From assembly GCA_950097015.1 (NCBI GenBank), contig CATNEN010000034.1, positions 3,658,001 to 3,722,000 on the forward strand: 64,000 nt of DNA, given 5' to 3'. Position 1 is the first letter of the stretch. The number at the start of each line of letters is the position of its first letter. The position numbers and the translations under genes were made by a program. A model generated the notes under the pieces. That model had not been told where the DNA came from. It worked only from the letters and a program-made list of their open reading frames with translations, and did no database searches. Shown in pieces: positions 1-61,000 of this stretch. The DNA is from Macrostomum hystrix. Lineage: Eukaryota > Animalia > Platyhelminthes.

Positions 1-1400
1 AATTGACATCTGATGCTTCAGGATTGACATCTGATGTTTCAGGACTGACATCTGATGTTTCAGGACTGACATCGGATGTTTCAGGATTCACATTTGATGT
101 TTCAGAATTGACATCTGATGTTTCAGGATTGACATCTGATGTTTCAGGATTGACATCTGATGTTTCAGGACTGACATCTGATGTTTCAGGATTGACATCT
201 GATGTTTCAGGACTGACATTTGATGTTTCAGAATTGACATCTGATTTTTCAGGATTGACATCTGATGTTTCAGGACTGACATCTGATGTTTCAGGATTGA
301 CATCTGATGTTTCAGGACTGATATATGATGTTTTAGAATTGACATTTGATGTTTCAGGATTGACATCTGATGTTTCAGGATTGACATTTGATGTTTCAGA
401 ACTGACATTTGATGTTTCAGAATTGACATCTGATTTTTCAGGACTGACATCTGATGCTTCAGGATTGACATCTGATGTTTCAGGACTGACATCTGATGTT
501 TCAGAATTGACATCTGATGTTTCAGGATTGACATCTGATGTTTCAGGACTGACATCTGATGTTTCAGGATTGACATCTGATGTTTCAGAACTGACATGTG
601 ATGTTTCAGGACTGACATCTGATGTTTCAGGACTGACATGTGATGTTTCAGAATTGACATTTGATGTTTCAGGACTGACATCTAATGTTTCAGGATTGAC
701 ATTTGATGTTTCAGGATTGACATCTGATGTTTCAGGATTGACATTTGATGTTTCAGAATTGACATTTGATGTTTCAGAATTGACACCGGATGTTTCAGGA
801 CTGACATCTAATGTTTCAGGACTGACATCTGATGCTTCAGGACTGACATTTGATGTTTCAGAATTGACATCTGATGTTTCAGGATTGACATCTGATGTTT
901 CAGGACTGACATCTGATGTTTCAGGATTGACATCTGATGTTTCAGGACTGACATGTGATGTTTCAGGACTGACATCTGATGTTTCAGGATTGACATGTGA
1001 TGTTTCAGGATTGACATTTGATGTTTCAGAATTGACATTTGATGTTTCAGAATTGACATCTGATGTTTCAGGATTGACATCTGATGTTTCAGGACTGACA
1101 TCTGATGTTTCAGGATTGACATCTGATGTTTCAGGACTGACATGTGATGTTTCAGGACTGACATCTGATGTTTCAGGATTGACATGTGATGTTTCAGGAT
1201 TGACATTTGATGTTTCAGAATTGACATTTGATGTTTCAGAATTGACACCTGATGTTTCAGGACTGACATCTGATGTTTTAGGATTGACATCTAATGTTTC
1301 AGGACTGACATGTGATGTTATGGATTACGATATGTTTTTTTAGGATTAGGATCTGATGTTTTTGGATTGGGATCTGACGTTTTTGGATTGAGATGTTTCA
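1..1400. repeat. 21-bp minisatellite (TTGACATCTGATGTTTCAGGA), runs off the window start
   Basis: Direct 21-bp periodicity, degenerating after ~1320. ORFs 3..1343, 88..681 and 808..1290 are only its translation (LTSDVSG heptads). Confidence 0.97.
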
Positions 1401-5000: not shown

Positions 5001-8000
5001 ATTATAATATGAGGACATGGATTATAATATGAGGACATGAATTGTAATATGAGGACAGGGATTATAATATGAGGACAGGGATTATAATATGAGGACATGA
5101 ATTGTAATATGAGGACAGGGATTATAATATGAGGACAGGGATTATAATATGAGGACAGGGATTATAATATGAGGACAGGGATTATAATATGAGGACATGG
5201 ATTATAATATGAGTACAGGGATTATAATATGAGGACAGGGATTATAATATGAGGACATGGATTATAATATGAGGACAGGGATTATAATATGAGGACATGG
5301 ATTATAATATGAGGACATGAATTGTAATATGAGGACAGGGATTATAATATGAGGACAGGGATTATAATATGAGGACAGGGATTATAATATGAGGACAGGG
5401 ATTATAATATGAGGACATGGATTATAATATGAGGACATGAATTGTAATATGAGGACAGGGATTATAATATGAGGACAGGGATTATAATATGAGGACAGGG
5501 ATTATAATATGAGGACAGGGATTATAATATGAGGACATGGATTATAATATGAGGACAGGGATTATAATATGAGGACATGGATTATAATATGAGGACATGA
5601 ATTGTAATATGAGGACAGGGATTATAATATGAGGACAGGGATTATCATACGATAACACGGATTATAAAATTATTGTATAAGAATATATAAATTATATTAA
5701 AAATAATTAAAATATGGTTTTAATAAAAGGGGATAAATTGTAATGAAACAGAAGATAGCTCTGACCTGAAAGTGCGAACTGCTAACCGACTTCGCGATTT
5801 GCTTGAACAGTGGCACCATAATCTTTTCAAACTGGCCAGGCTCCATCACGTCCAGAATCTCTTCGATCTCGCCTAGATACATGATCTCCTTTGAGCTGAC
5901 TGTGCGCGGCCAGAATTTGAGCAGACCGCGGACGACCTGCTCGGTCAGGGTGGCGTCCTTCTCCAGGAACTGAACCACACAGTAGGCCAGCTGTGCATGA
6001 AACATGCCCAATGATTTGGCCTTGTGCAACGGTAGCAGCACTTTGACTAGGAACTGCTTATGCTCGGCCTTCAGTGGCAGAGCGAATCCGTTGATGATGC
6101 TGCCCAGAATCTCGAGCAGTTCGCCAACACCGTTGAACTGCTCAGTCTCGTAGATGAAGCGCAGAAAGATATTATTAATCTGTTTGCGTATGAAAGCCCG
6201 CAGGCCAAGAAATTTGCCATAGATGCGGTGAAGCACCGTTTTAAGAAAGTCGCGCTCTCTAGGATCTTCGCTGTCGAATAGTTCCAGAAGCTGCGGGGAT
6301 GACAATTAAACTAAAAACGTAACTGTGTATCTATGACGCCCTCGACATCCTACTGACAAGATCGAGTAGGATATACGCATATTTATTATGTGTAAAATAA
6401 TATTTTGCCTAACGATTTCCCGATTGTTTGGTCATTTGTAGATTTTTTGTTCATCAGAGATTCGGGATAATTTACTTACTCTATGAAAATTTTCACTGAA
6501 GATTCTCTTAGTTGGAATAGGCTATATTGCAAGTAATTTCTTGCAAATTTATTACGAATTTGTAATTTATTACAATAGACAGAGTAAAATATGGGTTATA
6601 AAAACATGTTTCAAACAGGGGATAAAGAAATTTATTTTTTAATACAAAGAATAAAGAATAAAGGATAAAGAAATTTAATTTTTTAATTTAACAGCATTAT
6701 TATTTAGCAAATTAAAAAATCAATAATAGTATAGTAATAATATTATATTGATTGACTGAGCAAACGCTTTTTTGTCTTAACTAAACACTACAGCTTGCTT
6801 TAATTATTACATCTAATACGCAGACACTTACGTTTCTTGTGTTATAAGTTTTAAGGATTATTTTACTAATAAAGTGCATACCCTGATGTAGTATAAATAA
6901 ATTGGGAAAGAAAAAAGAAGTCCTATAAAATATGGACCCGCCCAATTCTAGCCCGCGTTGAGTACTGCCCGTTCTCTGTGGTGTGTATTCTAAGTATACA
7001 AAGGAATTCTAAGACATTGTCTAGCCTCTCACAACAACTAGACAACGTTTAGAGAAGATAATGTCATAGTGACCGCTAGATACCAGATGCAGGCACAAAG
7101 TACACTGTCCATCAATTATACTGAGTCCGATGGGCCCAGCGATGCAAAGAAACACGGGACAGTTAGGTCGTCAGAAGATCTATTGCTAAGGCATAGATTT
7201 CTATCGTCTCTTAACTTTAGAGCAGTAAAAAGAGAACGGCCCTTTGCAGCCAGTCGTGCTTGTAATCATAGTTGACAACGCGACAGTCTGAATGACTACT
7301 GGCACTCAGTGATCTAGTCTAGTAGACAAGATAAGGCAGCGCCTACCACATTCGATGCTTGCATAGCCAACTTTATCCTGCATCGGTTTTTAGGGCCGCG
7401 TTTTTTTCTAATATTTCAGTTGTAATAGTTGCATTCGTTTCAGTTTTTATCCTGCCTCAGTTGTAATAGCTGCATTCATTTCAGTTTTTATCCTGCCTCA
7501 GTTGTAATACGAGCGTAGCTGCATTCATTTCAGTGTTTATCCAGCCTCAGTTTTAATAGCTACATTCATTTCAGTTTTTATCCTCCCTCAGTTCTCATAG
7601 TTGCATTCATTTTAGTTTTTATCCTGCCTCAGTTGTAATACGAGCGTAGCTGCATTCATTTCAGTTTTTATCCAGCTTCAGTTGTAATAGCTGCATTCAT
7701 TTCAGTTTTTATCCAGCCTCAGTTGTCATAGTTGCATTCATTTCAGTTTTTATCCAGCCTCAGTTTTCATAGCTGCATTCATTTTAGTTTTTATCCTGCC
7801 TCAGTTGTAATAGCTGCATTCATTTCAGTTTTTATCCAGCCTCAGTTGTCATAGTTGCATTCATTTCAGTTTTTATCCAGCCTCAGTTGTCATAGTTGCA
7901 TTCATTTCAGTTTTTTTTCCAGCCTCAGTTGTCATAGTTGCATTCATTTCAGTTTTTATCCTGCCTCAGTTGTAATAGCTGCATTCATTTCAGTGTTTAT

Positions 8001-17700: not shown

Positions 17701-18575
17701 CCAATGTAACTCGTGTTAGATCTGAAAACATTGTCGCAGCTACAGCAGAATTGTTCAACTGTTTTACTCAGTCACCAAAAAATTATTTAGCATGCAACCA
17801 TTTATTTTAGTATACTCGTTTATACGCAGTTGGATATATACACCGTTCCTAACATGCTGCGCATTTTCCAGTAAATTAGTCCATGAATATTCTACAATCC
17901 AAGTACGAGCTATAATTATAAAGTGTGAGGAATATATGCATCCGGTTTTTACCTCATCTAAGTTCCAACTTACGCTCGTACGATACGAAAATGTCAGGTA
18001 TTTATACCATTCGATTCCAGGAATTGAATCAGGATAGTGGCTTAAATGCTGTCAGAATTAAACAGCATATCTATCGCTAAGTAAGTGTGTAAACAGTTCT
18101 GTCTCAAAATAGCTAACTCGGTTCTACGCAATTAAGCTTTGTGTTAAAATCAAGGCAGATATATGCATGAACTGCTCTTGTCCACAGTTAGTTTTATATT
18201 AATTGTACATTTAGATTGGTAGTTTAAAACTTCGCAAAAGTTGAAAAGCCATGCGCGAAGTGGAGGTGGCACTGCTGCACCACACCTATACGGAATGCAC
18301 ACTCGGCCTATAGTTTCATCGATCGGTTCACTATAGTCGCTTGGCAAAGACCAATTTAAATTTAAATCATGCATGGCTTGCAATGTTTGTTGCTTGGCCA
18401 CTAATTGCAAGCCAAACTGACAGCAGCTCTGCATGCTTGTACAAGCCAACCAAAGCGATATGGATCGTATATCTTGCCTATCCAGGTTATCAGGTAAGGG
18501 TGCTTTTTTGTCATATAACCATGGGCTTGAAAAATACAATGACCAATTATTCATTGAGTAGCTTTTGTTTTACAG

Positions 18576-18859
18576 TCGAGCACCTGAATTCGCATAGATT
18601 CGCAGCCAAAGGTCCAGAGTGCAAGGGATGTCTAATTAGGCGAGAGCTCAACCCAGTGACCGGAGAGCACTTTTGTGAGTACACTCGCCTCACAGAAAAG
18701 TCTACTAAGACTATGAGTCTTTCACTAGCAAAACCTACTCTCACGATCGATAATTTCAGACATGATTTATTACGCCATTCTGCGAGCTCATCATCTGTTT
18801 CTATTTCGCAACGAGCGAGCCAATTCCTGCGATGGTGTCAAGGATCTGCGGCTGCCGAT
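18576..18859 (+). CDS. Candidate upstream exon of the SH2 adaptor gene (no recognisable domain)
   Basis: TTTTACAG acceptor, open frame (EHLNSHRFAAKGPECK...SAAAD), GAT|GTGAGT phase-0 donor matching the phase-0 acceptor at 19681/19682. Not supported by homology. Confidence 0.4.
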
Positions 18860-19013
18860 GTGAGTTACCGGGGGAGAACTTTCCACACAGTAGCTTCCAA
18901 ACAAACGAAAATCATATTAATGTACCCATTGTTAAAAAATAAATATTAGAACAAAGTATAAGCGAATGGGTGCACCCTGTTCAAAGTCTAGAAGGTTCAT
19001 TTAACAGTAGAAC

Positions 19014-19320
19014 AGAGGTTGTAGCCTAGTGGTTAAGGCGTCGGACTCACGACTTGAAGGTCGGGGGTTCGATTCCCGACTCCACTGAAACAATTTGTGT
19101 CCTTTAGCAAGACAACTAACCTGCATTGCTTCAGTTCAACCAGCTGTTAAATGGGTAACAGCATTAGCTTGGATAATTGAAGGTGGGTGTGGCGTCCCCC
19201 CAGTCCATGGACTGAACAGCTGTACGCAGTCTTCAGATGCGCCGCGCAATAGCGGCGGCTGTGCTGTCGGCTGCACATCTGGCCCGATTGGGACATGTGT
19301 AATAAATTAATTATAATTAA
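19014..19320 (+). mobile_element. CORE-type SINE, family B, full-length copy
   Basis: GTTGTAGCCTAGTGGTTAAGGCG A box, GGTTCGATTCC B box, CORE-like segment, 3' AAT-rich tail; matches the 12805..13112 copy. Confidence 0.88.
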
Positions 19321-19681
19321 TCAATTAAATTAGGGGTACAAAGACCACACTATTTTGCCCTTGGGGAAGACCACGGGGGTATTCCAAATACCCACTGCCT
19401 ACATTACTTCACAAAAGCTCCCAAACCAAATAACCGATTTCCGTGAAAGTCCACCATATGGATCAAATTTTCCGTCCTTTACGATGAACTCACTTTCGAA
19501 GCCGACCGAGTCAGCTTATGAATAAGCCATGAATAGAACTTTTTCAGTCTGTTTAAAGAGTGGAAGTTTGTAAGAAGGCTTGTTGTGCATGTAGATTGCA
19601 GCATTAGAAGACCAGATTTCGTTGAATCCTTGACAAGCCCCGCGTTCTCCCCGAGCAGCCGCGAGTTTAAGCCGGACTCAG

Positions 19682-22600
19682 ATTGGCCTCACTGCGGCGA
19701 CGGCTTTGAGCTGGGCGCCGGCGCCGGCGCCTCCGCCTCTGGACAGCCCAGCGCAAGCCCAGCCGATGACGTCAGCTGCTGGACGGTTGGCATTCCCCTT
19801 TCAGGCGGAGGGCGCTGGCAGAGTCCTTTCAGCAGCTACGCCTAAGTCGGCAGTCTGCGGCCTCGAGCTGCCGCCCGGCGAGGACGAATACGAAGACGGC
19901 GAGGGAGCCGACGGCGGGTCTGAGTTGGACGGCCTGCTGGCTGAACTGGCCGAGAAGCAGCCGCCGAACACGGATTCACCACCGGCCTCCGATTCTGGCA
20001 GCATTTCTAGGTAATTCCCTACCATTCTCGAAATTTATAAGACAAAAGAAATAAAATGCTGCAGCAAAGTCAAATCATTTGAAATCGACAGCAGTGGCAA
20101 GCCACGACCGCCGCCACCACCGCGCCGTTCCTCGGTTTTGAGCTCCGGGACGCCAGCAGCGCCGTCTACCTGTTCCACGCAGTCGCAAGCACATCTTTGC
20201 GTGCCGGAGCCGCCAGCCAAAGAGAAGCCGCGCCCGCCTTCAAGGAGTTCAAATTTGATGCCCACTGAAAACACGAAGCCGCCTTTAGTGCTTCCAAAAC
20301 CGGCAACTGCAGCTAACCAACCGCCAGTGCCTCCGAAGGCGCCTGTGCCACCAAAGCAGCAGCGACCCGCAGCTCCTGCAAATCAGCCGCCATTGCCATC
20401 AAAAATAGGAACCTTTGTTGAACGAGATATTCCACAGCTACCTCTAAAGCTGCCGTTGACGGCAAATCAACCACCGCTGCCACCGAAGCTGCCGTTGACG
20501 GCAAATCAGCCACCTGTGCCACCGAAGCTGCCGTTGACGGCAAATCAACCACCGCTGCCACCGAAGCTGCCGTTGACGGCAGATCAGCCACCTCTGCCAC
20601 CGAAACTGCCGTTGACGGCAAATCAGCCACCTGTGCCACCGAAACTGCCGTTGACGGCAAATCAGCCACCTGTGCCACCGAAGCTGCCGTTGACGGCAAA
20701 TCAACCACCGCTGCCACCGAAGCTGCCGTTGACGGCAAATCAACCACCGCTGCCACCGAAGCTGCCGTTGACGGCAGATCAGCCACCTCTGCCACCAAAG
20801 ACATCAAGCGTGGTTGAACCGGATGTTCCACAGCAGCCTCTTAAGCTGCCGTTGATGGCAAATCAGCCACCTGTGCCACCGAAACTGCCGTTGACGGCAA
20901 ATCAGCCACCTGTGCCACCGAAACTGCCGTTGACGGCAAATCAACCACCTCTGCCACCAAAGACATCAAGCGTGGTTGAGCCAGATGCTCCACTGCTGCC
21001 ACCGAAGCTTCCATCGACGGAAAATCAGCCACCGCTGCCACCAAAGACATCAAGCGTGGTTGAGCCAGATGCTCCACTGCTGCCACCGAAGCTTCCATCG
21101 ACGGAAAATCAGCCACCGCTGCCACCAAAGACATCAAGCGTGGTTGAGCCAGATGCTCCACTGCTGCCACCGAAGCTTCCATCGACGGAAAATCAGCCAC
21201 CGCTGCCACCAAAGACATCAAGCGTGGTTGAGCCAGATGCTCCTCTGCTGCCACCGAAGCAGTATTTGTCCGTGAATGTGCCACCGTTGCCACCGAAACT
21301 GTCATCAGACCCGACCGAGCCAGAGGCGCTCCCGTTGCCACCGAGGCAGCCAGTGGAGCGAGAAGTCTTCCAGCCCAACCTATTCGGCTTGCTGCATTTT
21401 CCCGGAGCGGCGCCACCCGACGCCATTTGCGGCTATTATCGACGGGGTTACTACTCTGGGAACGATGTTAAAGATGCAAAACGGTAAGGCGCATCGTACA
21501 AAGTCAAACCCAGTAACATGTTAAGGAATATTTTTATCGCCTCTTTCGACCATCCCCAGGTTGATGCGCAAAGCGTCAGGCAACGGAGTGTACATGCTCC
21601 GCGGCTTCTGTCAGGGCCAGCAGGATCAGGAACTGGCTGTCTGTCTGCGCTTAGACGAGAAATCCTACAAATTCCGCGTCGAAATGACGTCAAACCCGAG
21701 CGGCTGTCAGCAGTTCTGCATTGCTGGAGAGAAAAACCGGGGAGACCACGCCAGCATGGAGGCTCTGCTGTTTCATTATCACCTGTTCCCAATCCTCACT
21801 GGCATCGACGTCACTGACATGCGACTGGCCAGGCCTTTTGACTTGGAGTGAGCGAGCCGACTAACTTACCGTTTGGCGAAGGAAACTGTTGAACTGTGTT
21901 GGTTGTCATGATGTTGTTTGCTGACGTGCTTGGTTACTGTCACTTTTGTCGTTGTCGAGTTAGTTGCTAACTAGTTGGCTGCAGTCATATTGCTTGCTAT
22001 CGTACTACTTACTACCGTGGTTTTGTGTCGTGTTGGTTGTGTTTCTCTATAAGTAAAATACTGAGTGTGAATTTTTGCCAAGATAATAGTGCACAAAATT
22101 GCATTTCACTTTTTCAGACCCGACGCTGTCATCACTGGCCTGACGGCCGTGTTCTCAGCCTGCCTGTGGCAGTACGGTGGCAAGGCCACTTGCACGGAGT
22201 GAGCAAGCATATTATAAATATTCATCGGCTACAAAATTTACAGTTAAAAAATAATTTCGTTTTGTTTTTCAGCGTCCTAGTTGAAGCCGGCGATGGGACA
22301 TACGCCCTGCGCCTGGACTCGGACAATGCGACGGTGGTGTGTCTGTGCGTTGTACAGCAGAGCCAGGTGTTGAAGTTTCGGATTGTTGTGTCCGGCTCCG
22401 GCCAAAAGGTCAGTTAAGCGTCAATTTGGGGGGGGGTGAGTGGCAGAGCGGTTCAACGCGCATTTGCCTCTCGCACCAAGGTCCCTGAGCTCCCTGAGGT
22501 CAGTGAGAGTGTACACTGACTAATGATGAGAGAGTTAGGGCAGATGTACACACCTGTGTGAGTGTGTGCCTGCGTACAGTATCTGTGTGCGTGTGTGCTC

Positions 22601-24918
22601 AGGAGTCAGCGAAATGGGCAGAATTGCCTCCTCGCTGGCTGCGGGTCTAGTGTCACCAAATGATGTGCCACTGCCCGCAGCAGTCCCGCAATTATTGTTA
22701 CGAGTATTAGGGGTACCATTTTAGAATGGCCTCCAGCTACAGTGACATATCCAGACCGTGTACGAAAATCCCCATTTCAGAAGACGTTTGCCATAAATTT
22801 TCCTAACTCGACACAATTCGACAGCATTGAAGATCTTCTGCTGCATTATCACAAGAACCCGCTGCCTACCAACACGCAGTGTGCGCCGCAAATTATGCTT
22901 AAAATTCCGTTTCAACTTTCAGCGTAAGACAGCAATTGTGCAGCATTTATTGCTTGGGATAAAGGAAATTCATTGTATGACAGATAAAAGAAACTCATTT
23001 GCAAATTGTTTTAACTTTTTTGTCGTTCAAAATCGAGAAAATGGAGATAAAAATATGATCGGCAAAAACTGTCGGAAACTTGTTGAGAAACTCGGGGGAA
23101 CATTGGGACGACACTGTAAAGACAGGAGAAGGATATTAAGTAGACACTTAAAATGTGTAGAACAAAAGGTTGACACAGTGAAGGATATTGGGTAGACACT
23201 GCGGAGGATATTGGGTAGACACTGAGGAGGATATTGGGTAGACACTACGGAGGATATTGGGTAGACACTGCGGAGGATATTGGGTAGACACTGAGGAGGA
23301 TATTGGGTAGACACAGTGGAGAAAATTAAGTAGACACTGAGGAGGATTGGGTAGAAATTGAGGAGGATATTGGGTAGACACTGCGAAGGATATTGGGTAA
23401 TTGGGTAGAATCTGAGGAGGATATTGGGTAGACACTGCGAAGGATATTTGGTAATTAGGTAGAATCTGAGGAGGATATCGGATAGACTCTGAGGAGGATA
23501 TTGGATAGACTCTGAGGAGGATATTGGATAGACTCTGAGGAGGATATTGGGTAGACACTGCGAAGGATATTGGGTAATTGGGTAGACTCTGAGGAGGATA
23601 TTGGGTAGACTCTAAGCAGGATATTGGGTAGACTCTGAGGAGGATATTGGATAGACTATGAGGATGATATTGGGTAGACTCTAAGGAGGATATTAGGTAG
23701 ACTCTGAGGAGGATATTGGGTAGACTCTGAGGAGGATGTTGGGTTGACACTGAGGATTATTTTGGGTTGGACTCACAAATTGGGGGGTAGGGTTTGATTT
23801 TATTAGAACAATTTGTGTCCCCAAGAAAAAACTTGACACTGCATCACTTTCGTTCACCCAGCTTTTATAAGGCTGTTATCATTAGCTGCATGGGCCAATT
23901 GAGGGTGGTTGTGGCACCCCCTCACCAGTCCATGGACAGAACAGCTGAACGCAATAGCTGCGGCCGTACTGTTGGCTGCACAGCAAACCCAATGGGGGGC
24001 AAGTGTAATAAAAAAGTGATTTTTGTATTTTCGCGCTCTACTACTTACAAAAGGAATCGAACATAAGTAGTAAGTTGTGAAAGCGCAAGACTTTACGAAA
24101 TTTCCAGGAAATGCCAGCAGGAGCTAAGCCGTCACGTCAAGCTGCCAGACGAACTGGCAGTTCGCAGTGGCACAGCGGACGCCTTGGCTGCCAAGTTGAG
24201 CAAAGCTGGATCAGCGAAAGGTGGCGGCAATTTTTTTTTGCACGTGACTAAAGAGCGCAAGGGAGGTGGGGGAATCCTGCTGGCTATTGAAGAGGGCGGT
24301 GGCACCGAAGTACAGCGTCTTCGCATTGTTGCCATGGATACGGGTCTGATCGGACAGCTACAGGTCAGTGATAAAAATAAGTAGACCCTTTAAGGTAGAC
24401 TTTTTAAGAGTTCTACGACTTCTAAGAATTGTACGACTTCTAAGAATTGTACGACTTCTAAGAATTGTACGACTTCTAAGAATTGTACGATTTCTAAGAA
24501 TTGTACGATTTCTAAGAATTGTACGACTTCTAAGAATTGTACGATTTCTAAGAATTGTACGATTTCTAAGAATTGTACGATTTCTAAGAATTATACGATT
24601 TCAAAGAATTGTATGATTTCTAAGAATTGTACGATTTCTAAGATCTCTATGAATTTTACAAATTCTAAGAATTCTACGATTTCGAATAACTCTGCGATTT
24701 CTAATAAGTCTTCGGTTTCTAAGAATTATTTCGTTCCTAACAAATCGTCGAATCTACAAGTTCCAAAGTAAAAAAAATTCCCAACTCTGCAGAGAATTTA
24801 CTACCTGGAAGACAAGCCAGAGGTGGCAGCACTCAGCATGGACCGCCTGGTTCAAATCCTCTGCGTCAATCCTAGCTGCCTAACTCAGGGATTCCCTCGA
24901 CTCACGGTTAGGCTGTGA
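19682..24918 (+). CDS. Adaptor protein: acidic Tyr motif, long PxxPPK repeat region, three tandem SH2-like domains (5' end uncertain)
   Basis: Exons 19682..20010, 20065..21483, 21560..21847, 22118..22198, 22273..22408, 22781..22923, 24108..24363, 24793..24918(TGA), all GT-AG and phase-consistent. SH2 hallmarks: DAKRLMRKASGNGVYMLR...SMEALLFHY; DVLVEAGDGTYALR...FDSIEDLLLHY; KLSKAGSAKGGGNFFLH...SMDRLVQIL. Start is either ATG 19766 or an upstream exon. Confidence 0.8.
20449..21300 (+). repeat. Coding minisatellite: 39-bp (LPLTANQPPLPPK) and 84-bp (TSSVVEPDAPLLPPKLPSTENQPPLPPK) units
   Basis: In-frame tandem units inside the 1.4-kb exon; unit lengths are multiples of 3 and no frameshifting variants occur. 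Confidence 0.92.
22428..22700 (+). mobile_element. SINE family A, copy 2 (internally deleted), in an intron splitting SH2 domain 2
   Basis: GGGGGTGAGTGGCAGAGCGG head; lacks the B-box-to-middle segment present in copies 1 and 3; 3' body matches. Confidence 0.82.
23185..23755. repeat. ~22-23-bp minisatellite (GAGGAGGATATTGGGTAGACTCT) in SH2-gene intron
   Basis: Tandem periodicity with indel variants; source of ORFs 23148..23750 and neighbours. Confidence 0.93.
23855..24015 (+). mobile_element. SINE family B, 5'-truncated diverged copy
   Basis: CCAGTCCATGGACAGAACAGCTG...CAATAGCTGCGGC...GGCTGCACA matches the 3' half of family B. Confidence 0.7.
24410..24700. repeat. 18-bp minisatellite (TTCTAAGAATTGTACGAC/T) in last SH2-gene intron
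   Basis: 18-bp period; ORF 24368..24616 (LLRIVR)n is its translation. Confidence 0.95.
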
Positions 24919-42329: not shown

Positions 42330-44210
42330 AATGCCCAGTTAGGCCCGGTCATAGACTAAGGAAAGCATTTATTTGATGCGAGAGAAATTTATTTGGCCGG
42401 GACAATAAATTATTTATTGGCCCGAGTACTTTAGAGTTTCTGTTTGAACGAAATAACGTTTAAGAAACGAAGAACGAACGAAGTACTGCACTTTTGTCAT
42501 TGAGTTCTCAAAAACGAAAATTGTTAATCGAAAGTAATCGTGACCTTATTCGATTCGCCACAGATCTCGATTCGCATCTTCTTAGGACTAGGACTGTCGG
42601 AGTTGACGGCGACAGTTGACTGTTGTCCTTGGTGGGCAACAACATTAGAAGAGGTAGCAGTAGTAGCTCCAGTGGTAGTAATGACGGCAGAGGCCTGGCT
42701 CTGGCAGACTATGTGCGTCATGGAATCTCCACCAGCGTTGATGTTTGTCACTTGGTTCACGTCTCTTGCGGCAATGATTGCCGAGGCCTCCTTCTGCTTA
42801 GTCACGGATTGACGGATATACCTTTCAAGAGCCGAGGAGCTGTGGCCGGTGACGCGACAAATGTCGGCACGTTCGACACCGGCTTCATGAAGTCTTGTTG
42901 CAGCCGTTTTGCGCAAACTCTGGTTGGTATACTTGCTGGTATCCTCAGGTGCAACTAGTTTGACACATGTCTTTACTGTCTCTGCGAGAGTGTGCCGTCC
43001 GACAGGAGATCGCATGAACCATGAACAGGCTGAACCAGGCGACCACGACCGATTCACCGCCAAGAACAAGGCGGCTTCGCTATTAGGAGGACGCTTTGTC
43101 GTGTACTCTTTGTAGATACACACTGGGCAGCGTTCATGATTATCCGTATGAAACGCACGAACTACCTTCGGGTCACGGAGCAATCCCTTCAGACCGCCTT
43201 GATTGGTTTTGGTCACGCAATTTTCTCTGTAGACGATGCACTCGTGGCATCCAACAGACTCCAGTTGAATCTGCCTGTCAAATTCTAGGTCACGTAGTTC
43301 CGCACCGCCACGCAGGGCAAAATGTTTCCTTAACAGCCACACGACGGCGTTTAGTAGGCTGCGCGGCGTCGTCACACCCAGCACACCATCAGCCCATAGT
43401 TTGTCCTCAATCGTATTTGGAATTGTTTCAGCCTTGTTCAAGCGAGCACCTTTGCCTTCTCTGGTAGCCACCTTCATAGCCGCATCCAATGCGACACGGG
43501 TTTCCCGGAAGGCGTCGTCCCTCCAGATTGACCAGTTTTGTTTCAACACATTTTGCCAGTACCATTGAATCATGGACACAAAGTCTTTGAGAGTGGTGGA
43601 AGTGTACCGTTCTCCATCCTGATTGCGTACTTCCATTACGAAGTACTTCAGAAGAAAATTCAGATCTGGCTTCGTCATCTCCGAGAGATCTTTCAGGACC
43701 ATTAATGATGGACCACCACCCGTTGACCAAAGCAGTCTTCTTCTGCTCATGCCAATTCTTGAATACGCCGACGATCCAATCAGCCTTCTTTTTAGTATTT
43801 TCTGGTATCGCTTTCTCCAGTTGCAAATTCAACTCCAACTCGTTCATCATCGCATGCCGACTCGAAACCACTCCATCACGTTGTTTGTCGCCTTCGGCCA
43901 CCATGAACAGGTCAAGATTAAAATCCATGTCCGGCAGAGTCAAGTCAAGTAAGTCGTCAGGAATACTCATTGTGGTTTTTTGGCTGGATAAGTCGCTGGT
44001 AAGTACGTTGCCGGATTTCATCGTAACTTTCCTCTCGCTTGACACGAACTGAGTAATAAATACATCATTCCCCACTTGTTTGACTTATCTATGGCCGTAA
44101 CCGTCTTCGGCCACGTTTATTTGGCCTCGGCTTCGCCTCGGCCAATAAACGCGTCCTCAGCCGCTTACGACCAAAATAAATAAAACAAGTGGGGAATAAC
44201 ATATACTTAG
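42330..44210 (-). mobile_element. Crypton-type tyrosine-recombinase DNA transposon (boundaries approximate)
   Basis: DUF3504-like YR coding region flanked by a ~135-bp hairpin (44068-44200) and related TTTATT(T)GGCC motifs at 42388-42426; no TIR or TSD seen. Confidence 0.75.
42524..44021 (-). pseudogene. Crypton tyrosine recombinase (DUF3504/ZMYM-KCTD1-like domain), one frameshift near 43720-43750
   Basis: PENTKKKADW..VFKNW in ORF 43428..44075 continues in ORF 42524..43750: YFVMEVRNQDGERY, FALRGGAELRDL, KTNQGG, RCPV, TNQSLRKTAATRL, RVTGHSSSALERY. Confidence 0.85.
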
Positions 44211-45424: not shown

Positions 45425-47856
45425 TTATTCGGCCACAGACTTGGGCAGGGGCAGGTCCGCAGACACGGCCATGACTCGAGCCTGGGCTAGCCCAGCCAGC
45501 AGGTCCTCCTTCGAGTGCAGCGTCTCCGGTGTGTCGGCCCGAGCCTCCTCAAGTCGCAGTTTGTCAATGTCGCAGCTAGTCAGGCTGATTTGGGAGGCGA
45601 TGGCGGCTGCTGTGCTGCTGCTAGTCAGGGTGGTGGCCGTGAAACCGTACGTGAAGGCGTACGTTGGCCCGCCCTGCGTTGGATTGGCGGGTTCAGATTT
45701 TTCGGGTACACCATAGTGGGTAGACAAAGACTATAGTGGGTAGACAAAGACTATAGAGGGTAGACAATGACCATAGTGGGTAGAAAATGACCATAGTGGG
45801 TAGACAATGACCATAGTGGGTAGACAATGACCATAGTGGGTAGACAATGACCGCAGACGGTAGTCCATGATTAGCCTTTTCAAACGCGACAATGCCGCAA
45901 GGTATAAAGCCTTCGACGCCCATCTGTCTCTCCCACGCACCTGAGGCCGCAGAAAGGATGACATTGTGTAGCCGCAGCTGGTCCGCGGCGGCAGCTCTGG
46001 AAAGGCCAGCGTCACGGAGCCCGCAGTGCATCGGACGGCCGCGGCGGCGGCGTCGGCCGCAGCAACAGCGGCAGCATCAGCGGCATCGGCGGCGTCGTTG
46101 GTCGGCTTTGCAAGACGGTCGGCTCGGCGCAGTTCGGCAGCCTCCTGGTAGGGCGGACAGATCGGCGGCTGGCTGGGCTCCGAGTGCTGATGTGCGTCCG
46201 ACAGCGGATAATTTCTGTCGGCGTCGTAGGCGCTCAAGTCTCCGCAGGCAACGAACGGCACCACGACGCGATTTGAGTCGCGCAGCCGATTGAGGTCCAG
46301 GTCGTAGTGCCCGGTCAGCAGCGGATTGGACAGGTTGGGCTCGTAGCCAATGGGAGGCCGGTAGCACTGGCAGACGGCGAATGCTTCTAGGCTGGAGTTT
46401 CTGGACGAGCGCGGCTTGGCGATGGCCACGGACTGGAAGAAGATCTTCAGCTGGGCGTGCAACAGCGAGACGTCGCGACCGCGAAATATTTTCGCTACAA
46501 ATGTGGCTCCGGGGCCCAGAACGAAAGTGGCAATGTTCAGTGCAGCGATTAGCAGCTGGCTCTGGACGTATTCGTCGATGTCATGCAGGCCGGTGACATC
46601 CGGAGCGCCGTCGCAGACAACCAGATCCGCCGGCTGGCCGCCAAGCAGGTCGATGATGCCGCGAGCGGTGGCAGCCTTGGTGATGTCGCCCTGCAGCTGT
46701 GACACGCCCGGTATCGGAGCCATGGCCTGCAGGTCCACCGCTACGATGTGAGCAGGGGCGTCTGAGCCTTCGGCTCCGCCTGGATTCAGCTTGCTCACTA
46801 GCACCTGTGCGGGAAATGAACGGGTGGCTTAATTAACGGCTTGACTGCCCCTGCTCTCTGGCTCATGACTTGATTTATGCATCAGCAGTTAATTATTAAT
46901 ATTATTCAATTCCTGATCAGTAATCACATATTAAACCTCTAATCTACATCTTAAAGTCACTAACTCCCTAAAATTACAATCTTAGCAGTCTGATCCATTA
47001 TATCAAGCGTCTCTAATCGCCATCCCGAAATTCCCTAATCCCCATCCCAACAGTCCCTAATCCCCATTCGAAAATTCCCTAATCCCCATCCTAAGTCTCT
47101 AATCCCCAATCCTAACAGTCCCTAATCCCAATCCCAACAGTCTCTAATCCCCATCCCAACAGTCTCTAATCCCCATCCCAACAGTCTCAAATCCCCATCC
47201 CAACAGTCTCTAATCCCCATCCCAAATTCCCTAATCCTAACTCAAAAGTGTTGTATCCCAATCAATGGGGGTGAGTGGCAGAGCGGTCGGTTAACGCGGT
47301 TGCCTCTCGCACCAAGGTTACTGAGCTCGATTCCGCGGCGAGGCCACATTCATTTGTGGCGTAGCCGCGGAGAGAAGACTTGGGAGCTTGTCGTGCAATT
47401 TAAGCCATTAAGGGCCGACATCCAAGGCACAGTGAAAGTGTACACTGCCTGACGATGAGAATAGTCCCATACGTGTGAGCCTGTGGCTGCGCATGGTATC
47501 TGTGTGCCCAGGAGTCAGCGAAATGGGCAGAATTGCCTTCTCGCTGGTAGCGGGTCTACTGTTACAAATGATGTGCGATTGCACGCAGCCCTCCTGCAAT
47601 TATTATTATAATTATTTATCCCCATGCCTATCGTAGTCTGTCAACACCCGCAGTCTCCATCATCAGCCGAGCTTCTTACCTGACTCCAGCTTCCGGGCGC
47701 AGCGCACAGGTCAACAACTCGCCTTACTTTGGCCGGATCTAGCAGAGCGAACTCCTGGTCTAGCTGCAGAAGCTTGAAAGCGCTGCGGGCTCGCCAGCCC
47801 TCCTCCTTGGCCAGACGATAATAGATGTCGCGTCTGTCCTTGCTGGACTTGCCCAT
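45425..47856 (-). CDS. FTSJ1: tRNA (C32/N34) 2'-O-methyltransferase FTSJ1/Trm7, with an uncertain C-terminal extension
   Basis: Exon 1 47680..47856 ([29 protein letters not shown]...[11 protein letters not shown]); exon 2 from 46804 ([52 protein letters not shown]); K-D-K-E tetrad intact. Likely donor at 45941 (CAG|GTGCGT) to a last exon ending TAA at 45425; 3' structure is less certain. Confidence 0.9.
45712..45852. repeat. 20-bp minisatellite (CATAGTGGGTAGACAATGAC)
   Basis: About 7 tandem units. Confidence 0.92.
47020..47240. repeat. 22-bp C-rich minisatellite (CTAATCCCCATCCCAACAGTCT) in FTSJ1 intron 1
   Basis: 22-bp period (47141/47163). Confidence 0.9.
47266..47610 (+). mobile_element. 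SINE family A, copy 3 (FTSJ1 intron 1)
   Basis: GGGGGTGAGTGGCAGAGCGG head, CTCGATTCC B-box-like, shared body, (ATT)n tail. Confidence 0.85.
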
Positions 47857-58052: not shown

Positions 58053-61000
58053 CTGAAAAGTATAGTTAGTATAAGAATGTTTATAGTATTCTGCCTTTTT
58101 AAACACAGGCACATATTATCAGCATAAGAAAATAACTAGGGCAGTTCTTACTGTTGCCCCTAGGTCTATGGACAATAGAGATTGATAGAGAAAAACTCGA
58201 ACAAAAATTATGTCTGCTTTTAAACATTCATTTAAATTTATATTTTCCTGACATAACCTGGTAATAAATCCATAACTAAAAGCCAGAAAAAACATGGTAG
58301 TACTATTTAATATGACCTAATAAAACAAGGTTAATGCTAAAAGGCAAACACTGTAAATGTCTGTCTTAAAATTGTAATTCTTTTTATAATTTATAATTTA
58401 TAATTTATCTAATTTATATTTATTTAAGATTTAGTTTTATCTGTGTAGCTAGTTTTAGCATAGCTCTTAAGCTCATTAATCTAATTAGTTTTTTCTGTTT
58501 CCACTCTCTTACCTGCAATTATTGTCACTAACATTAACAAATATTTCAAATATTATAGACCATTATGTCAAGACATCTACACGTTGTACTATTATAGAAT
58601 ATACAGACTATTTTTACTTTAGCTAGAAAATACATTAATAGGACCATCAGTATTATAAAAAGAAATGTATGATTCCCTGGTTATGATTATTTGTATAATT
58701 ATAACAAGTAATGATGTAGGCCTAGCTATTTGATGAGTAGGCCTAGCTTCAATGTTTTAGATAGGGTGGGAAGTTTGCATTTTCCCTAATCCTGTTTTCA
58801 GTTGGCTTACAGTAGTATATGGTATAGTATATGGTCCAAGTTTTTTGGTTACACTATCAAACAGAGAAAATTTAAGTTTTTTTGTCATTCCTATAGGCTT
58901 TGAGCCACATTGCCGACAGAATACTTAAAATAGGGGTCCTAAGTTGTGAACATTATATCTGACTTGCTGCCCCTGGCATACATTTTTATGCCTGGCATAC
59001 ATAAGGAAAATTATTTACCATTACACTGAATATCTACAGGAGACAAAATAATAGTCCAACTATACTAAATCTTTCAAATTTGTTTGCTTCTTGGTTGTTT
59101 GATTGTCTGTCTGGCTGAAACTGTCAACAAAGTGAAAAACTAGACCAATTTTCATTGTGTTTTGAATCAAAATTTGCAAATATTTCTGTAACAATATGGT
59201 TCAACTTACATTTTAATCTGTAAACAAGCATTTTAAAACTAGGAAAAAACTTTTCTTTCCCTATCCAATTGCCCAATACACAAGAAAAGAGTGTATTTTT
59301 CTTGCAGTCAGCTTGATTCTAATCTCTGATGTCTATGGTCTGTTTTTGTTGGCTGCTTAGCTCGAGCCTCTATTTAAAGGCCATCTAACCAAGGAATTCA
59401 AAATCTAGCAACTGGAATGGCAACTGAAATAGTGGTGAGGACTTTTTATACAATATTAGGCTTACTATGATTGCCATAGACATAGGATTTGTTTGCCTCA
59501 TCAACTTAGATTGCCACTAAGAAGAATCAGATTTGTTTGCTTTTTGTCTTAGTCTGTAAGCACTAAAATAAAATGCCAAAGTGACTTTCCTATAGCTGTC
59601 TTTACATCCTCTGCAGAAGTTTTGTGTCTTCTACATGCCAAATAAATGTGCCCTTTTGGCTGCAAGTTGGCAATGGCATGGTCAGCAAGGATTTCATCCA
59701 AAAGTGTAATATCTAGACAACCTGCTTGGCACATTGGTAGAAGAGCATTTTCCAAGAAGCAACTTTCAAGGGCACTCGAATTTGCTCTTTTTACTTCACA
59801 GAATCATATTTTATTATTGATAATCAGTCCAACAGCAATGCACATTGAAAAAAAAAGAAATAACATAAAAAATGTACCACTCTTGTAAAAAGAAGATTAA
59901 AAGAAGATGCAGTTCCTACCCAATACAGCATGACATCATATTTCACAAAAATATTTACCTGCTTCGCAGTCAAGAAACACATAGTTGCAATAGCATCACG
60001 AGTTTGATGTTGCACATGTGAAACAACAAGAGAGATTATTATGCCAGTGAAATAATTTGCTCACTTGATGATCTGGTGGCTAAGTGTTCAAAAGAGAAGA
60101 AGCCATTGGGATTTGCTGCATATCAATCAGAAGACGCTCTTAGCATTACACTCCCATGATCAAGACTTCCATAGTTATGAATTGTAAGTTAGAAGTCCTA
60201 GTTTTTTGTGGCAGTCAGGCAAATTACATTTGTGAGTTGCTAACAAAGCAGATCAATCAAGCTGAGACAAACAAAACATTGAAGAAGAGGTTGATGACAC
60301 AGCAAAAAAACTCACAGGTAGGAAGCATTGATTTTGATGAGTGTTGCCTACTTTGTGTATATCCAGACTAGCACAACTGGCCTGGCAAAAGCAAGAATAA
60401 CTTTGTTTTATTGCTATATTCTTTCTTTGCTTGCAAAATATTTCTGAATTGTGCTTAGTTTTCTTTTTGTTTGCCCTTTGTTACATTTTCTCAATACAAT
60501 TAATAAGCTATCTCTTTTTGCTTTACTTGCTTGATATACGTCTGTGCCTACCTGTGTTACATCTAGAAATTGAAATAGTTTAAATGTTTTCTTATGTTGC
60601 ACTTTATTCCTCTGTTTTTTTATTGTTTTGAAAATACACTTTAAAATGCAATCCCTCTTTTTGAATACTCTGTGTGTCTATGTTGCATGCTTGCTATCTT
60701 TAATCTTGGCCTCATTTTGTATAGCTGTAGCTGTATAGATGCATTAAAATTCTTTAATCAATGCTAATTGTAAAAGCTTTTATAACTCCGAGAAACACCC
60801 ACATGTACATTTTCGTTAGTTTTTGTCTATTTAAGTGTATTTGGTTGCACTATGGCATAGATATATATTATCTTATCTTATCCTATGCTAACTTTATTAA
60901 AGGGTAAAACAGCAGAATTTTTATAACTAAGGTTTGGATAGTCTAGGATAAATTTCAGCGACCTGAGTAAACTGGGATATATAAAAATAATAGAAAGTGG

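What the first reader, a model, noticed from the sequence alone, without database searches (positions are those of the whole stretch)
19682..24918. Multivalent adaptor: ~20 PxxPPK SH3-ligand motifs fused to three tandem SH2-like domains
Seen: eight phase-consistent exons encode an acidic EDEYED tyrosine motif, then about 20 PP[LV]PPK / PLLPPK motifs, then three consecutive SH2-like folds. The ORF track shows these only as disconnected fragments. Known: PxxPx[R/K] is a class II SH3 ligand; SLP-76/BLNK/SH3BP2 combine Tyr motifs, a Pro-rich region and one SH2; SYK, SHP2, p85 and PLC-gamma have two SH2 domains. Inference: a non-catalytic scaffold that is multivalent on both the pTyr-reading and SH3-binding sides could nucleate signalling condensates, and I know of no described family with this architecture.
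Basis: partly seen in the sequence, partly recalled or inferred. Interest (0 to 1): 0.82.

Follow-up and report, generated by a model that had tools for sequence, protein, structure and literature searches.

The report
Flatworm adaptor: proline array plus SH2 row
This is a real, expressed flatworm (Macrostomum-type) gene for a non-enzymatic signalling adaptor that joins 21 proline docking motifs to two recognisable phosphotyrosine-reading SH2 domains and a third, degenerate one, an unusual build known so far only as unstudied database entries.

Summary
The gene is real.

- **Proline array:** exon 2 encodes 21 P[PL][LV]PPK motifs, made by a 39/84-nt tandem repeat. Fifteen fit the CrkII N-SH3 consensus PxLPxK.
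- **Domains 1 and 2:** they are paralogous, and their joint profile hits only SH2 domains in the PDB (best E 1e-4). The FLVR arginine is invariant.
- **Domain 3:** no Pfam or PDB profile detects it. It aligns in register with domains 1/2 and beats 300 of 300 shuffles, but has His in place of the phosphotyrosine-binding Arg. It is probably a degenerate SH2.
- **Structure prediction:** AlphaFold models were too poor (pLDDT 36-39) to decide any fold.
the gene extends upstream (exons 18576-18674, 18760-18859; exon 1 starts at 19659) and encodes a weakly PH-like N-terminus. The window also carries one extra base at 19843 that breaks this frame; the transcripts lack it.
- **Relatives:** only four uncharacterised Macrostomum lignano clusters ('SH2 domain-containing protein' in UniProt, one mislabelled). 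One is full-length and has about 24 LPPK units.

Verdict: a lineage-restricted new variant of SH2 adaptors. The SH3-docking and condensate functions are inferred, not shown. The scan noted other multi-SH2 genes in this genome before (s1-300424).

The parts
18576..18674 (+). Upstream coding exon (PH-like N-terminus, part 1); at least one further 5' exon with the start codon was not found
   Evidence: tblastn of P0001 gives 73% identity. The acceptor is ttttacAG and the donor GTGAGT. The split codon with the next exon gives Tyr, as in P0001. Not checked with reads.
18760..18859 (+). Upstream coding exon (PH-like, part 2: 'ILRAHHLFLFRNE..DGVKDLRLP')
   Evidence: tblastn of P0001 gives 79% identity. 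The sites are AG/GTGAGT, and the split codon with exon 1 gives Ile, as in P0001. The best PDB hit of the region's profile is the IPCEF1 PH domain, at E 0.81 only.
19659..20010 (+).
   Evidence: The joint 20010/20092 is seen in X3 and X4. The frame upstream of 19843 follows P0001. In the transcript form no in-frame ATG lies before exon 2, so the start must lie in an upstream exon.
19843..19843 (+). Extra T in the window relative to the transcripts; it makes TAA (19843-19845) in the conserved frame, so it is an assembly indel or a disabled allele
   Evidence: One base is left out in every X3 and X4 contig over this place (table 4). Without it the reading is ..SSYAKSAVCG.., matching P0001 ..NAYAKSAVCG...
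19880..19897 (+). EDEYED acidic tyrosine motif (candidate phosphorylation and SH2-docking site)
   Evidence: It is the only Tyr of the linker. GEDEYEDGE is identical in P0001 while the flanks diverge.
20092..21483 (+). Exon 2: Pro-rich region (30% Pro) with 21 P[PL][LV]PPK motifs; its last ~15 codons begin SH2 domain 1 (helix A, 'YYSGNDVKDAK')
   Evidence: Joints are seen at both ends. Motif count is and alignment to P0001/P0002.
20447..21260 (+). Coding tandem repeat (periods of 39 and 84 nt, i.e. 13-aa LPLTANQPP[LV]PPK and 28-aa TSSVVEPDAPLLPPKLPSTENQPPLPPK units)
   Evidence: Tandem Repeats Finder; unit listing.
21560..21847 (+). Exon 3: SH2 domain 1, strand B to strand G ('GVYMLRGF' carries the FLVR Arg)
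   Evidence: Joints. Language-model features place it among SH2 clusters at 0.91, 19 of 20 hits. The profile with domain 2 hits only SH2 domains in the PDB. Pfam and PDB phmmer on the exon alone gave nothing.
22118..22198 (+). Exon 4: linker and helix A of SH2 domain 2 ('LWQYGGKATC')
   Evidence: Joints; 73% identical to P0001; weak match to profile positions 2-18.
22273..22408 (+). Exon 5: SH2 domain 2, strands B-D ('GTYALRLDS')
   Evidence: Joints. It scores 38 bits against the domain 1/2 profile at positions 20-65 and is similar to exon 3 at z 5.2.
22781..22923 (+). Exon 6: SH2 domain 2, C-terminal half ('FDSIEDLLLHYHKNPL')
   Evidence: Joints. It scores 44 bits at profile positions 69-115 and is similar to exon 3 at z 7.7. 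The same domain in P0002 passes Pfam SH2 (30.3 bits against a cut-off of 21).
24108..24363 (+). Exon 7: domain 3, N-terminal two thirds ('GNFFLHVTKE', with His where SH2 domains have the FLVR Arg)
   Evidence: Joints are seen in four runs. There is no Pfam, PDB or Atlas hit. It aligns in register with domains 1/2 at score 20.2, against a shuffle maximum of 20.0 in 300 trials.
24793..24918 (+). Exon 8: end of domain 3 ('ALSMDRLVQILC' = putative helix B) and the TGA stop at 24916-24918; the 3' UTR runs on to at least 25119
   Evidence: Joint 24363/24793; contigs reach 25119 (table 8); 68% identical to P0001.

Best explanation
This is an expressed, Macrostomum-restricted gene for a non-catalytic adaptor of roughly 1000 residues.

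Shown:
- The exon structure and its splicing.
- A conserved acidic GEDEYEDGE tyrosine site.
- An array of 21 [PL][LV]PPK motifs built by a coding tandem repeat.
- Two closely spaced paralogous SH2 domains that keep the phosphotyrosine-binding Arg.
- A third C-terminal domain that is a far-diverged relative of those two, with His in place of that Arg.

Inferred:
- The N-terminus is PH-like.
- The SH2 pair docks the protein on tyrosine-phosphorylated partners, perhaps doubly phosphorylated ones, as in other tandem-SH2 proteins.
- The proline array then binds many copies of an SH3 adaptor. The Crk N-SH3 consensus PxLPxK fits best.
- The EDEYED tyrosine, once phosphorylated, adds one further SH2 docking site.
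- Domain 3 serves as a structural or non-pTyr interaction module.

The net effect would be local concentration of SH3 effectors at phosphotyrosine sites.
For: - **Splicing:** seven GT..AG joints in contigs of X3/X4, several also in X1/X2; phases are consistent.
- **Motifs:**. PxLPxK is the CrkII N-SH3 consensus (PMC10279719), and 15 of 21 motifs fit it exactly. The M. lignano relative P0001 keeps about 24 units ending in LPPK with a different 15-aa spacer, so the motif is kept while the repeats turn over.
- **SH2 domains 1 and 2:** they align collinearly with G, Y, L, R, C, E and H invariant. Their profile finds 96 PDB sequences, and all 60 listed are SH2 domains (VAV2 at 1e-4), with the Arg aligned to the FLVR Arg. 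Pfam SH2 scores 30.3 bits on domain 2 of P0002. The window's exons 4, 5 and 6 match the profile in order. Atlas features call exon 3 SH2.
- **Domain 3:** the hhalign alignment to domains 1/2 is in register; 0 of 300 column shuffles reach its score. The domain 2 exon is its best non-self hit in the window, and the SH3BP2 SH2 domain is its second-best PDB hit.
- **Upstream exons:**
Against: - No binding or phosphorylation was tested.
- Pfam detects no SH2 in any single exon of the window. In the full-length relative it detects only domain 2, just below the cut-off (20.8 against 21).
- Domain 3 has no significant match to any SH2 profile.
- Both AlphaFold models are unreliable (pLDDT 36 and 39), so no fold is verified.
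- The PH-like call rests on a hit at E 0.81.
- The motifs stem from recent tandem duplication, so their number alone does not show selection.
- The window copy is frameshifted at 19843.
- Transcript depth is low (about 4-10).
Confidence: 0.55

Rival explanations
1. The proline array is not an SH3-docking platform. It would instead be a fast-evolving minisatellite-encoded spacer (a polyproline-II rod), or a ligand for other proline readers such as class II WW domains, which recognise PPLP, or profilin. The protein would then act as a plain two-SH2 adaptor.
For: The array is a DNA-level tandem repeat at 75-86% identity. Unit length differs between relatives, 13/15 aa here against 15 aa in P0001, which is typical of rapid repeat turnover. 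PPLP lies inside 11 of the motifs. That class II WW domains bind PPLP is established knowledge, not tested here.
Against: The Lys after PP is invariant in all 21 units, and LPPK is kept in P0001 although the spacers differ. A C-terminal basic residue is the mark of class II SH3 ligands, not of WW or profilin ligands. Six motifs read PPVPPK and so lack PPLP.
Confidence: 0.2
2. It is a divergent orthologue of SH3BP2 (PH / Pro-rich / SH2) in which the SH2 domain was triplicated, and not a family of its own.
For: The order of parts is the same: a PH-like N-terminus, a Pro-rich middle, and SH2 at the C-terminus. The SH3BP2 SH2 domain (2cr4) is hit by the domain 1/2 profile at E 0.0017 and is the second-best hit of the domain 3 profile.
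Against: SH3BP2 is rank 19 for the domain 1/2 profile, behind VAV2, SH2D1B, SHIP2, p85, PLC-gamma and NCK1, so there is no specific affinity. The PH assignment is not significant. phmmer of exon 3 against 1.84 billion representatives found no SH3BP2-like protein. No phylogeny was possible.
Confidence: 0.12
3. The copy in this window is a disabled allele or young pseudogene, because the extra T at 19843 gives an in-frame TAA. The transcripts seen would then come from another haplotype or a near-identical duplicate.
For: The window differs from every contig over 19843 by one base. In the frame shared with P0001 this base creates a stop. That Macrostomum genomes are rich in recent duplicates is background knowledge, not tested here.
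Against: Apart from this base, the contigs match the window with 0-1 differences over 400-900 nt, introns removed (table 8). All other exons are open and all splice sites are intact. A single-base indel is a common assembly error.
Confidence: 0.13

Closest known systems
SH3BP2 (3BP2) adaptor
   Same: Non-catalytic. The order of parts is a PH(-like) N-terminus, tyrosine site(s), a proline-rich SH3-binding middle, and SH2 at the C-terminus.
   Different: SH3BP2 has one SH2 domain and a short proline region. Here there are two SH2 domains plus a degenerate third and 21 repeated motifs. There is no specific sequence affinity, and the PH call is not significant.
SLP-76 / BLNK / CLNK adaptors
   Same: An acidic tyrosine motif upstream, a proline-rich centre, SH2 at the C-terminus, and no enzymatic domain. 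The BLNK SH2 domain is hit at E 0.0056.
   Different: Those have several YxxP sites, one SH2 domain and no PH domain (from established knowledge). Here there is a single conserved Tyr site, a PH-like N-terminus and a row of SH2-type domains.
Tandem-SH2 proteins (ZAP-70/SYK, SHP-2, PLC-gamma1, PI3K p85)
   Same: Two SH2 domains close together in one chain. These proteins appear among the PDB hits. This suggests avid reading of doubly phosphorylated partners.
   Different: All of those are enzymes or enzyme regulators with exactly two SH2 domains. None carries a long SH3-ligand array or a third SH2-like unit.
C3G and Sos proline-rich regions (Crk / Grb2 SH3 docking)
   Same: They have repeated class II motifs, PxLPxK in the case of Crk N-SH3 (PMC10279719).
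   Different: Those have about four motifs next to a GEF domain (established knowledge). Here there are 21 motifs, no catalytic domain, and an SH2 head in the same chain.
Spt6 tandem SH2
   Same: It is a precedent for a second SH2 fold that lacks the pocket arginine (PMC3507883), as proposed here for domain 3.
   Different: Spt6 is a nuclear elongation factor that reads the phosphorylated Pol II CTD and is conserved in all eukaryotes. There is no sequence relation to this gene.

Membership tests
SH2 domain (Pfam PF00017): domain 1 (end of exon 2 + exon 3) | Significant match to an SH2 profile | tested here: met
   Pfam alone gives no hit. The domain 1 + 2 profile finds 96 PDB sequences, and all 60 listed are SH2 domains, best E 1e-4. 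Atlas features call it SH2 at 0.91. The signal is shared with domain 2, to which domain 1 aligns collinearly.
SH2 domain (Pfam PF00017): domain 1 and domain 2 | Invariant Arg on strand B (FLVR motif) that binds the phosphate | tested here: met
   R is invariant in all eight rows (GVYMLR / GTYALR) and aligns to the Arg of VAV2 'GTYLIRERP'.
SH2 domain (Pfam PF00017): domain 2 (exons 4-6) | Significant match to an SH2 profile | tested here: met
Domain 2 of relative P0002 scores 30.3 bits against a cut-off of 21. In P0001 it scores 20.8 bits, E 4e-4. The window's exons 5 and 6 match the family profile at 38 and 44 bits, in order.
SH2 domain (Pfam PF00017): domain 3 (exons 7-8) | Significant match to an SH2 profile | tested here: inconclusive
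   There is no Pfam hit for domain 3 of P0001 or P0003 at E up to 10 and no significant PDB hit. hhalign to domains 1/2 gives P 0.0098, in register. The score of 20.2 exceeds all 300 column shuffles, whose mean is 10.8 and maximum 20.0.
SH2 domain (Pfam PF00017): domain 3 | FLVR arginine | tested here: not met
   The aligned position is His in the window (GNFFLHV) and in P0001 (GNFYLHL). Paralogue P0003 reads GNFLVLRRS there.
SH2 domain: all three | alpha / beta-sheet / alpha fold confirmed by structure | tested here: inconclusive
   The AlphaFold models have pLDDT 36.4 and 39.4. The three-domain model shows helix-four strands-helix for each unit, and the domain 3-only model shows three N-terminal helices, three strands and two C-terminal helices. 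Foldseek on the domain 3 model gave no meaningful hit.
SH3BP2 family | PH domain at the N-terminus | tested here: inconclusive
   Pfam gives no hit. The best PDB hit is the IPCEF1 PH domain, aligned over strands 1-4, at E 0.81.
SH3BP2 family | Single C-terminal SH2 domain with closest similarity to the SH3BP2 SH2 | tested here: not met
   There are two to three SH2-type domains. 2cr4 is rank 19 at E 0.0017, behind VAV2 and others.
SLP-76/BLNK family | Several YxxP sites, one SH2 domain, no PH domain | tested here: not met
   There is one conserved Tyr site (EDEYEDG, not YxxP), more than one SH2 domain, and PH-like exons upstream.
Class II SH3 ligand / Crk N-SH3 ligand | PxxPx[KR]; for Crk, PxLPxK | tested here: met
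   Twenty-eight PxxPx[KR] matches occur in exon 2. Fifteen of the 21 repeat motifs fit PxLPxK; the consensus is from PMC10279719. This is a sequence match only; binding cannot be tested with these tools.

The most novel reading that the evidence does not exclude
Macrostomum flatworms have evolved their own family of scaffolds in which a row of SH2-type domains and more than 20 Crk-type SH3 docking sites sit in one chain. A single phosphotyrosine event could then assemble a large multivalent SH3-adaptor cluster (a condensate), in one polypeptide. Vertebrates need three proteins for this (LAT-Grb2-Sos or nephrin-Nck-N-WASP).
Probability: 0.15. Interest if true: 0.75.

Novelty: new variant of a known kind. 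Interest (0 to 1): 0.55.

Why it matters
Well-studied proteins carry at most two SH2 domains, and multivalency for SH3 partners is usually spread over several proteins. A natural single-chain protein that combines an SH2 row with 21 near-identical SH3 ligands would be a ready-made test object. It would let one ask how valency sets the threshold of phosphotyrosine signalling and of clustering. It sits in an animal, Macrostomum, where RNAi and transgenesis exist. It also shows that a lineage can build new adaptor architectures from old modules, and that SH2 domains can drift beyond the reach of Pfam.

Tried and rejected
- **Pfam on each exon:** no SH2 hit.
- **phmmer of exons 3 and 7 against the PDB:** nothing.
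- **Atlas features for exon 7:** no usable hit.
- **The search for homologous proteins:** the exon 2 tail and P0001:1160-1545 both came back blank. The alignment query returned only the known M. lignano entries plus one garbled copy, P0009.
- **AlphaFold:** the three-domain region and domain 3 alone were both too poor to use. Foldseek on the domain 3 model gave only noise.
- **The look-up of encoding contigs for P0002 and P0003:** not on record.
- **tblastn for a further 5' exon, using P0001's upstream part:** nothing, and that part of P0001 looks chimeric with transposon-like sequence.
- **A weak PH-profile hit at 59869-60018:** read and dismissed as chance.
- **Mutually exclusive SH2 exons:** rejected, because one contig (X3 record 17) runs through exons 2, 3, 4, 5 and 6 in series.
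- **ATG 19766 as the start codon:** it holds only for the window's own frame and is out of frame in the transcripts.
- **Literature:** searches found no paper on a three-SH2 adaptor or on this Macrostomum family.

Full report
**Organism and setting**

The window is eukaryotic. It holds an actin gene, a Crypton-like element, a Pif1/Helitron-like fragment and tRNA-derived high-copy repeats. The best relative is 55-80% identical exon by exon. The window is therefore a Macrostomum-type flatworm, either another species or a paralogue. I could not tell which.

**Is the gene model real?**

Yes. Runs X3 and X4 (organism C, study P2) give contigs that match the window with 0-1 differences and skip exactly seven segments. 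All seven are GT..AG:
- 20011-20091
- 21484-21559
- 21848-22117
- 22199-22272
- 22409-22780
- 22924-24107
- 24364-24792

Three of these joints also occur in X1 or X2, which are other organisms from a second study. One X3 contig runs through exons 2, 3, 4, 5 and 6 in series, so the SH2 exons are not alternatives to each other. The phases fit and the frame ends at TGA 24916-24918. Contigs run on to 25119, which is 3' UTR.

**The proline array**

Exon 2 codes for 463 residues, 141 of them Pro. It holds 21 P[PL][LV]PPK motifs: 11 PPLPPK, 6 PPVPPK and 4 PLLPPK. By the looser class II rule PxxPx[KR] there are 28 matches. At DNA level this is a tandem repeat with periods of 39 and 84 nt at 75-86% identity, so the count reflects repeat expansion and not 21 separate inventions.

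The motif itself is nevertheless kept. The M. lignano relative P0001 has about 24 units ending in LPPK, with a different 15-aa spacer (LPPSSTESQPPLPPK). P0002 has PPPLPPK just before its first SH2 domain. The CrkII N-SH3 consensus is PxLPxK (PMC10279719), and 15 of the 21 motifs fit it exactly. This is a sequence fit only.

**The tyrosine motif**

EDEYED (19880-19897) holds the only Tyr of the linker. GEDEYEDGE is identical in P0001 while its flanks differ.

**Domains 1 and 2**

Single exons gave no SH2 hit in Pfam or by phmmer against the PDB. The evidence for SH2 comes from other tests:
- Exon 3 resembles exons 5 and 6, collinearly, at z 5.2 and 7.7 against shuffles.
- An alignment of domain 1 and domain 2 from the window, P0001, P0002 and P0003 has G, Y, L, R, C, E and H invariant.
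- A profile of that alignment finds 96 PDB sequences. All 60 listed are SH2 domains. VAV2 is best at E 1e-4; SH3BP2 scores 0.0017 and BLNK 0.0056. The invariant Arg lies on the FLVR Arg.
- Pfam's SH2 model passes its cut-off on domain 2 of P0002 (30.3 bits against 21). It narrowly misses on P0001 (20.8 bits).
- The window's exons 4, 5 and 6 match the family profile in order, at positions 2-18, 20-65 and 69-115. Exons 5 and 6 score 38 and 44 bits.
- Language-model features of exon 3 point to SH2 clusters (0.91, 19 of 20 hits).

I take both domains as SH2 domains able in principle to bind phosphotyrosine. The linker between them is short, about 15 residues.

**Domain 3**

No search recognises domain 3 directly. 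Pfam gives nothing for P0001 or P0003. The PDB profile search gives nothing significant, although the SH3BP2 SH2 domain is second at E 2. The Atlas gives nothing.

A profile-profile comparison with domains 1/2 gives P 0.0098, and the alignment is in register:
- GNFYLH on GTYALR
- LLAI on VLCV
- VHRLRLV on VMKFRIV
- ALSLDRLV on SSIEELLL

This is. None of 300 column-shuffled controls reached the observed score of 20.2; their mean was 10.8, sd 2.1 and maximum 20.0. The domain 2 exon is also the best non-self hit of the domain 3 profile among 1851 reading-frame pieces of the window.

In that alignment the FLVR Arg is His, both here and in P0001. By my own reading of the helix A region, the second pocket Arg is Ser. 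The likeliest reading is a far-diverged SH2-type domain that no longer binds phosphotyrosine in the canonical way. Spt6 offers a precedent, since its second SH2 domain also lacks the arginine (PMC3507883).

**Structure prediction**

AlphaFold failed for want of a deep alignment. The three-domain region of P0001 gave pLDDT 36.4 and domain 3 alone gave 39.4. The three-domain model shows helix, four strands, helix for each unit; the domain 3-only model shows three strands between helices. At this confidence that is only a hint. Foldseek on the domain 3 model gave noise.

P0001 aligns to three further stretches upstream: 18575-18673, 18762-18860 and 19660-19842. With canonical splice sites the exons are 18576-18674 and 18760-18859, and exon 1 starts at 19659. 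The two split codons give Tyr and Ile, exactly as in P0001.

This N-terminal region reads like a PH domain (CLIRRE.., ILRAHHLFLFRNE.., DGVKDLRL.., WTVGIPLSGGGRW). The best PDB hit is indeed a PH domain (IPCEF1), but only at E 0.81, and Pfam sees nothing. I therefore call it PH-like, at roughly even odds. The exon with the start codon was not found.

The window has one extra T at 19843. Every contig over that place lacks it. Without it the frame reads ..SSYAKSAVCG.., matching P0001. With it there is a TAA. This is an assembly indel or a null allele.

**Relatives and novelty**

phmmer of exon 3 against 1.84 billion representatives found only three real clusters; the profile search added a fourth, P0009, a garbled copy that UniProt labels 'Rad21_Rec8 domain-containing protein'. 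All are M. lignano UniProt entries, the other three named automatically 'SH2 domain-containing protein': A0A1I8GWQ2, A0A1I8G3B9 and A0A1I8GQE0. A0A1I8GWQ2 is a chimeric model; its real part is residues 646-1545. Together the paralogues show the same order of parts: PPLPPK, domain 1, domain 2, domain 3.

I found no paper on them. I did not examine that locus, but the paralogues seen here agree with a lineage-specific expansion.

**Mechanism**

The shown steps are the architecture, its expression and the conservation of the motifs. The inferred steps are these:
- SH2 domains 1 and 2 dock on phosphotyrosine partners.
- The proline array binds many SH3 domains, with Crk type the best fit.
- The EDEYED tyrosine is a kinase target.
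- Domain 3 is structural.

Condensate formation is possible for so multivalent a protein, but nothing here tests it.

The database relative P0001 stood in for it.

Noticed in passing
window 19300-19496, 22452-22700, 23831-24027: These are high-copy repeats; contig depth reaches the hundreds to thousands in RNA-derived runs. Two lie in introns 5 and 6 of the gene. The ORF at 19001-19126 (-) reads like a translated tRNA-derived SINE ('SRESNPRP').
   Followed up: no
window 23168-23767, 24401-24727, 25081-25905: There are three minisatellites: 23-nt units in intron 6, 18-nt units in intron 7, and 21-nt units (40 copies) just downstream of the stop codon. The last one starts inside the 3' UTR, because contigs reach 25119.
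   Followed up: no
window 29037-30092 (+): This uninterrupted reading frame is an actin (Pfam Actin, E 5.7e-131, profile positions 43-410). The first ~40 residues must lie in another exon.
   Followed up: partly
window 42527-43750 (-): This ORF carries DUF3504 plus a weak phage-integrase match and is Crypton-like.
   Followed up: partly
window 33187-34233 (+): This is a Pif1-type helicase fragment (PIF1 and Pif1_2B domains), probably a Helitron remnant.
   Followed up: no
window 45734-46804 (-): This 357-aa ORF has an FtsJ-like methyltransferase domain (E 4.9e-33).
   Followed up: no
window 3-1340 (+): This long open frame is made of short repeats. It draws many spurious coiled-coil and low-complexity Pfam hits (LPP, DUF948 and others) and is most likely a tandem repeat, not a gene.
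   Followed up: no
P0001 (UniProt A0A1I8GWQ2), residues 1-645 and 1546-2139: The M. lignano gene model is chimeric. The adaptor (residues 646-1545) is fused to unrelated sequence on both sides. Residues 1-42 of that flanking sequence also match window 5818-5943 at 81% identity, suggesting a shared repeat.
   Followed up: partly
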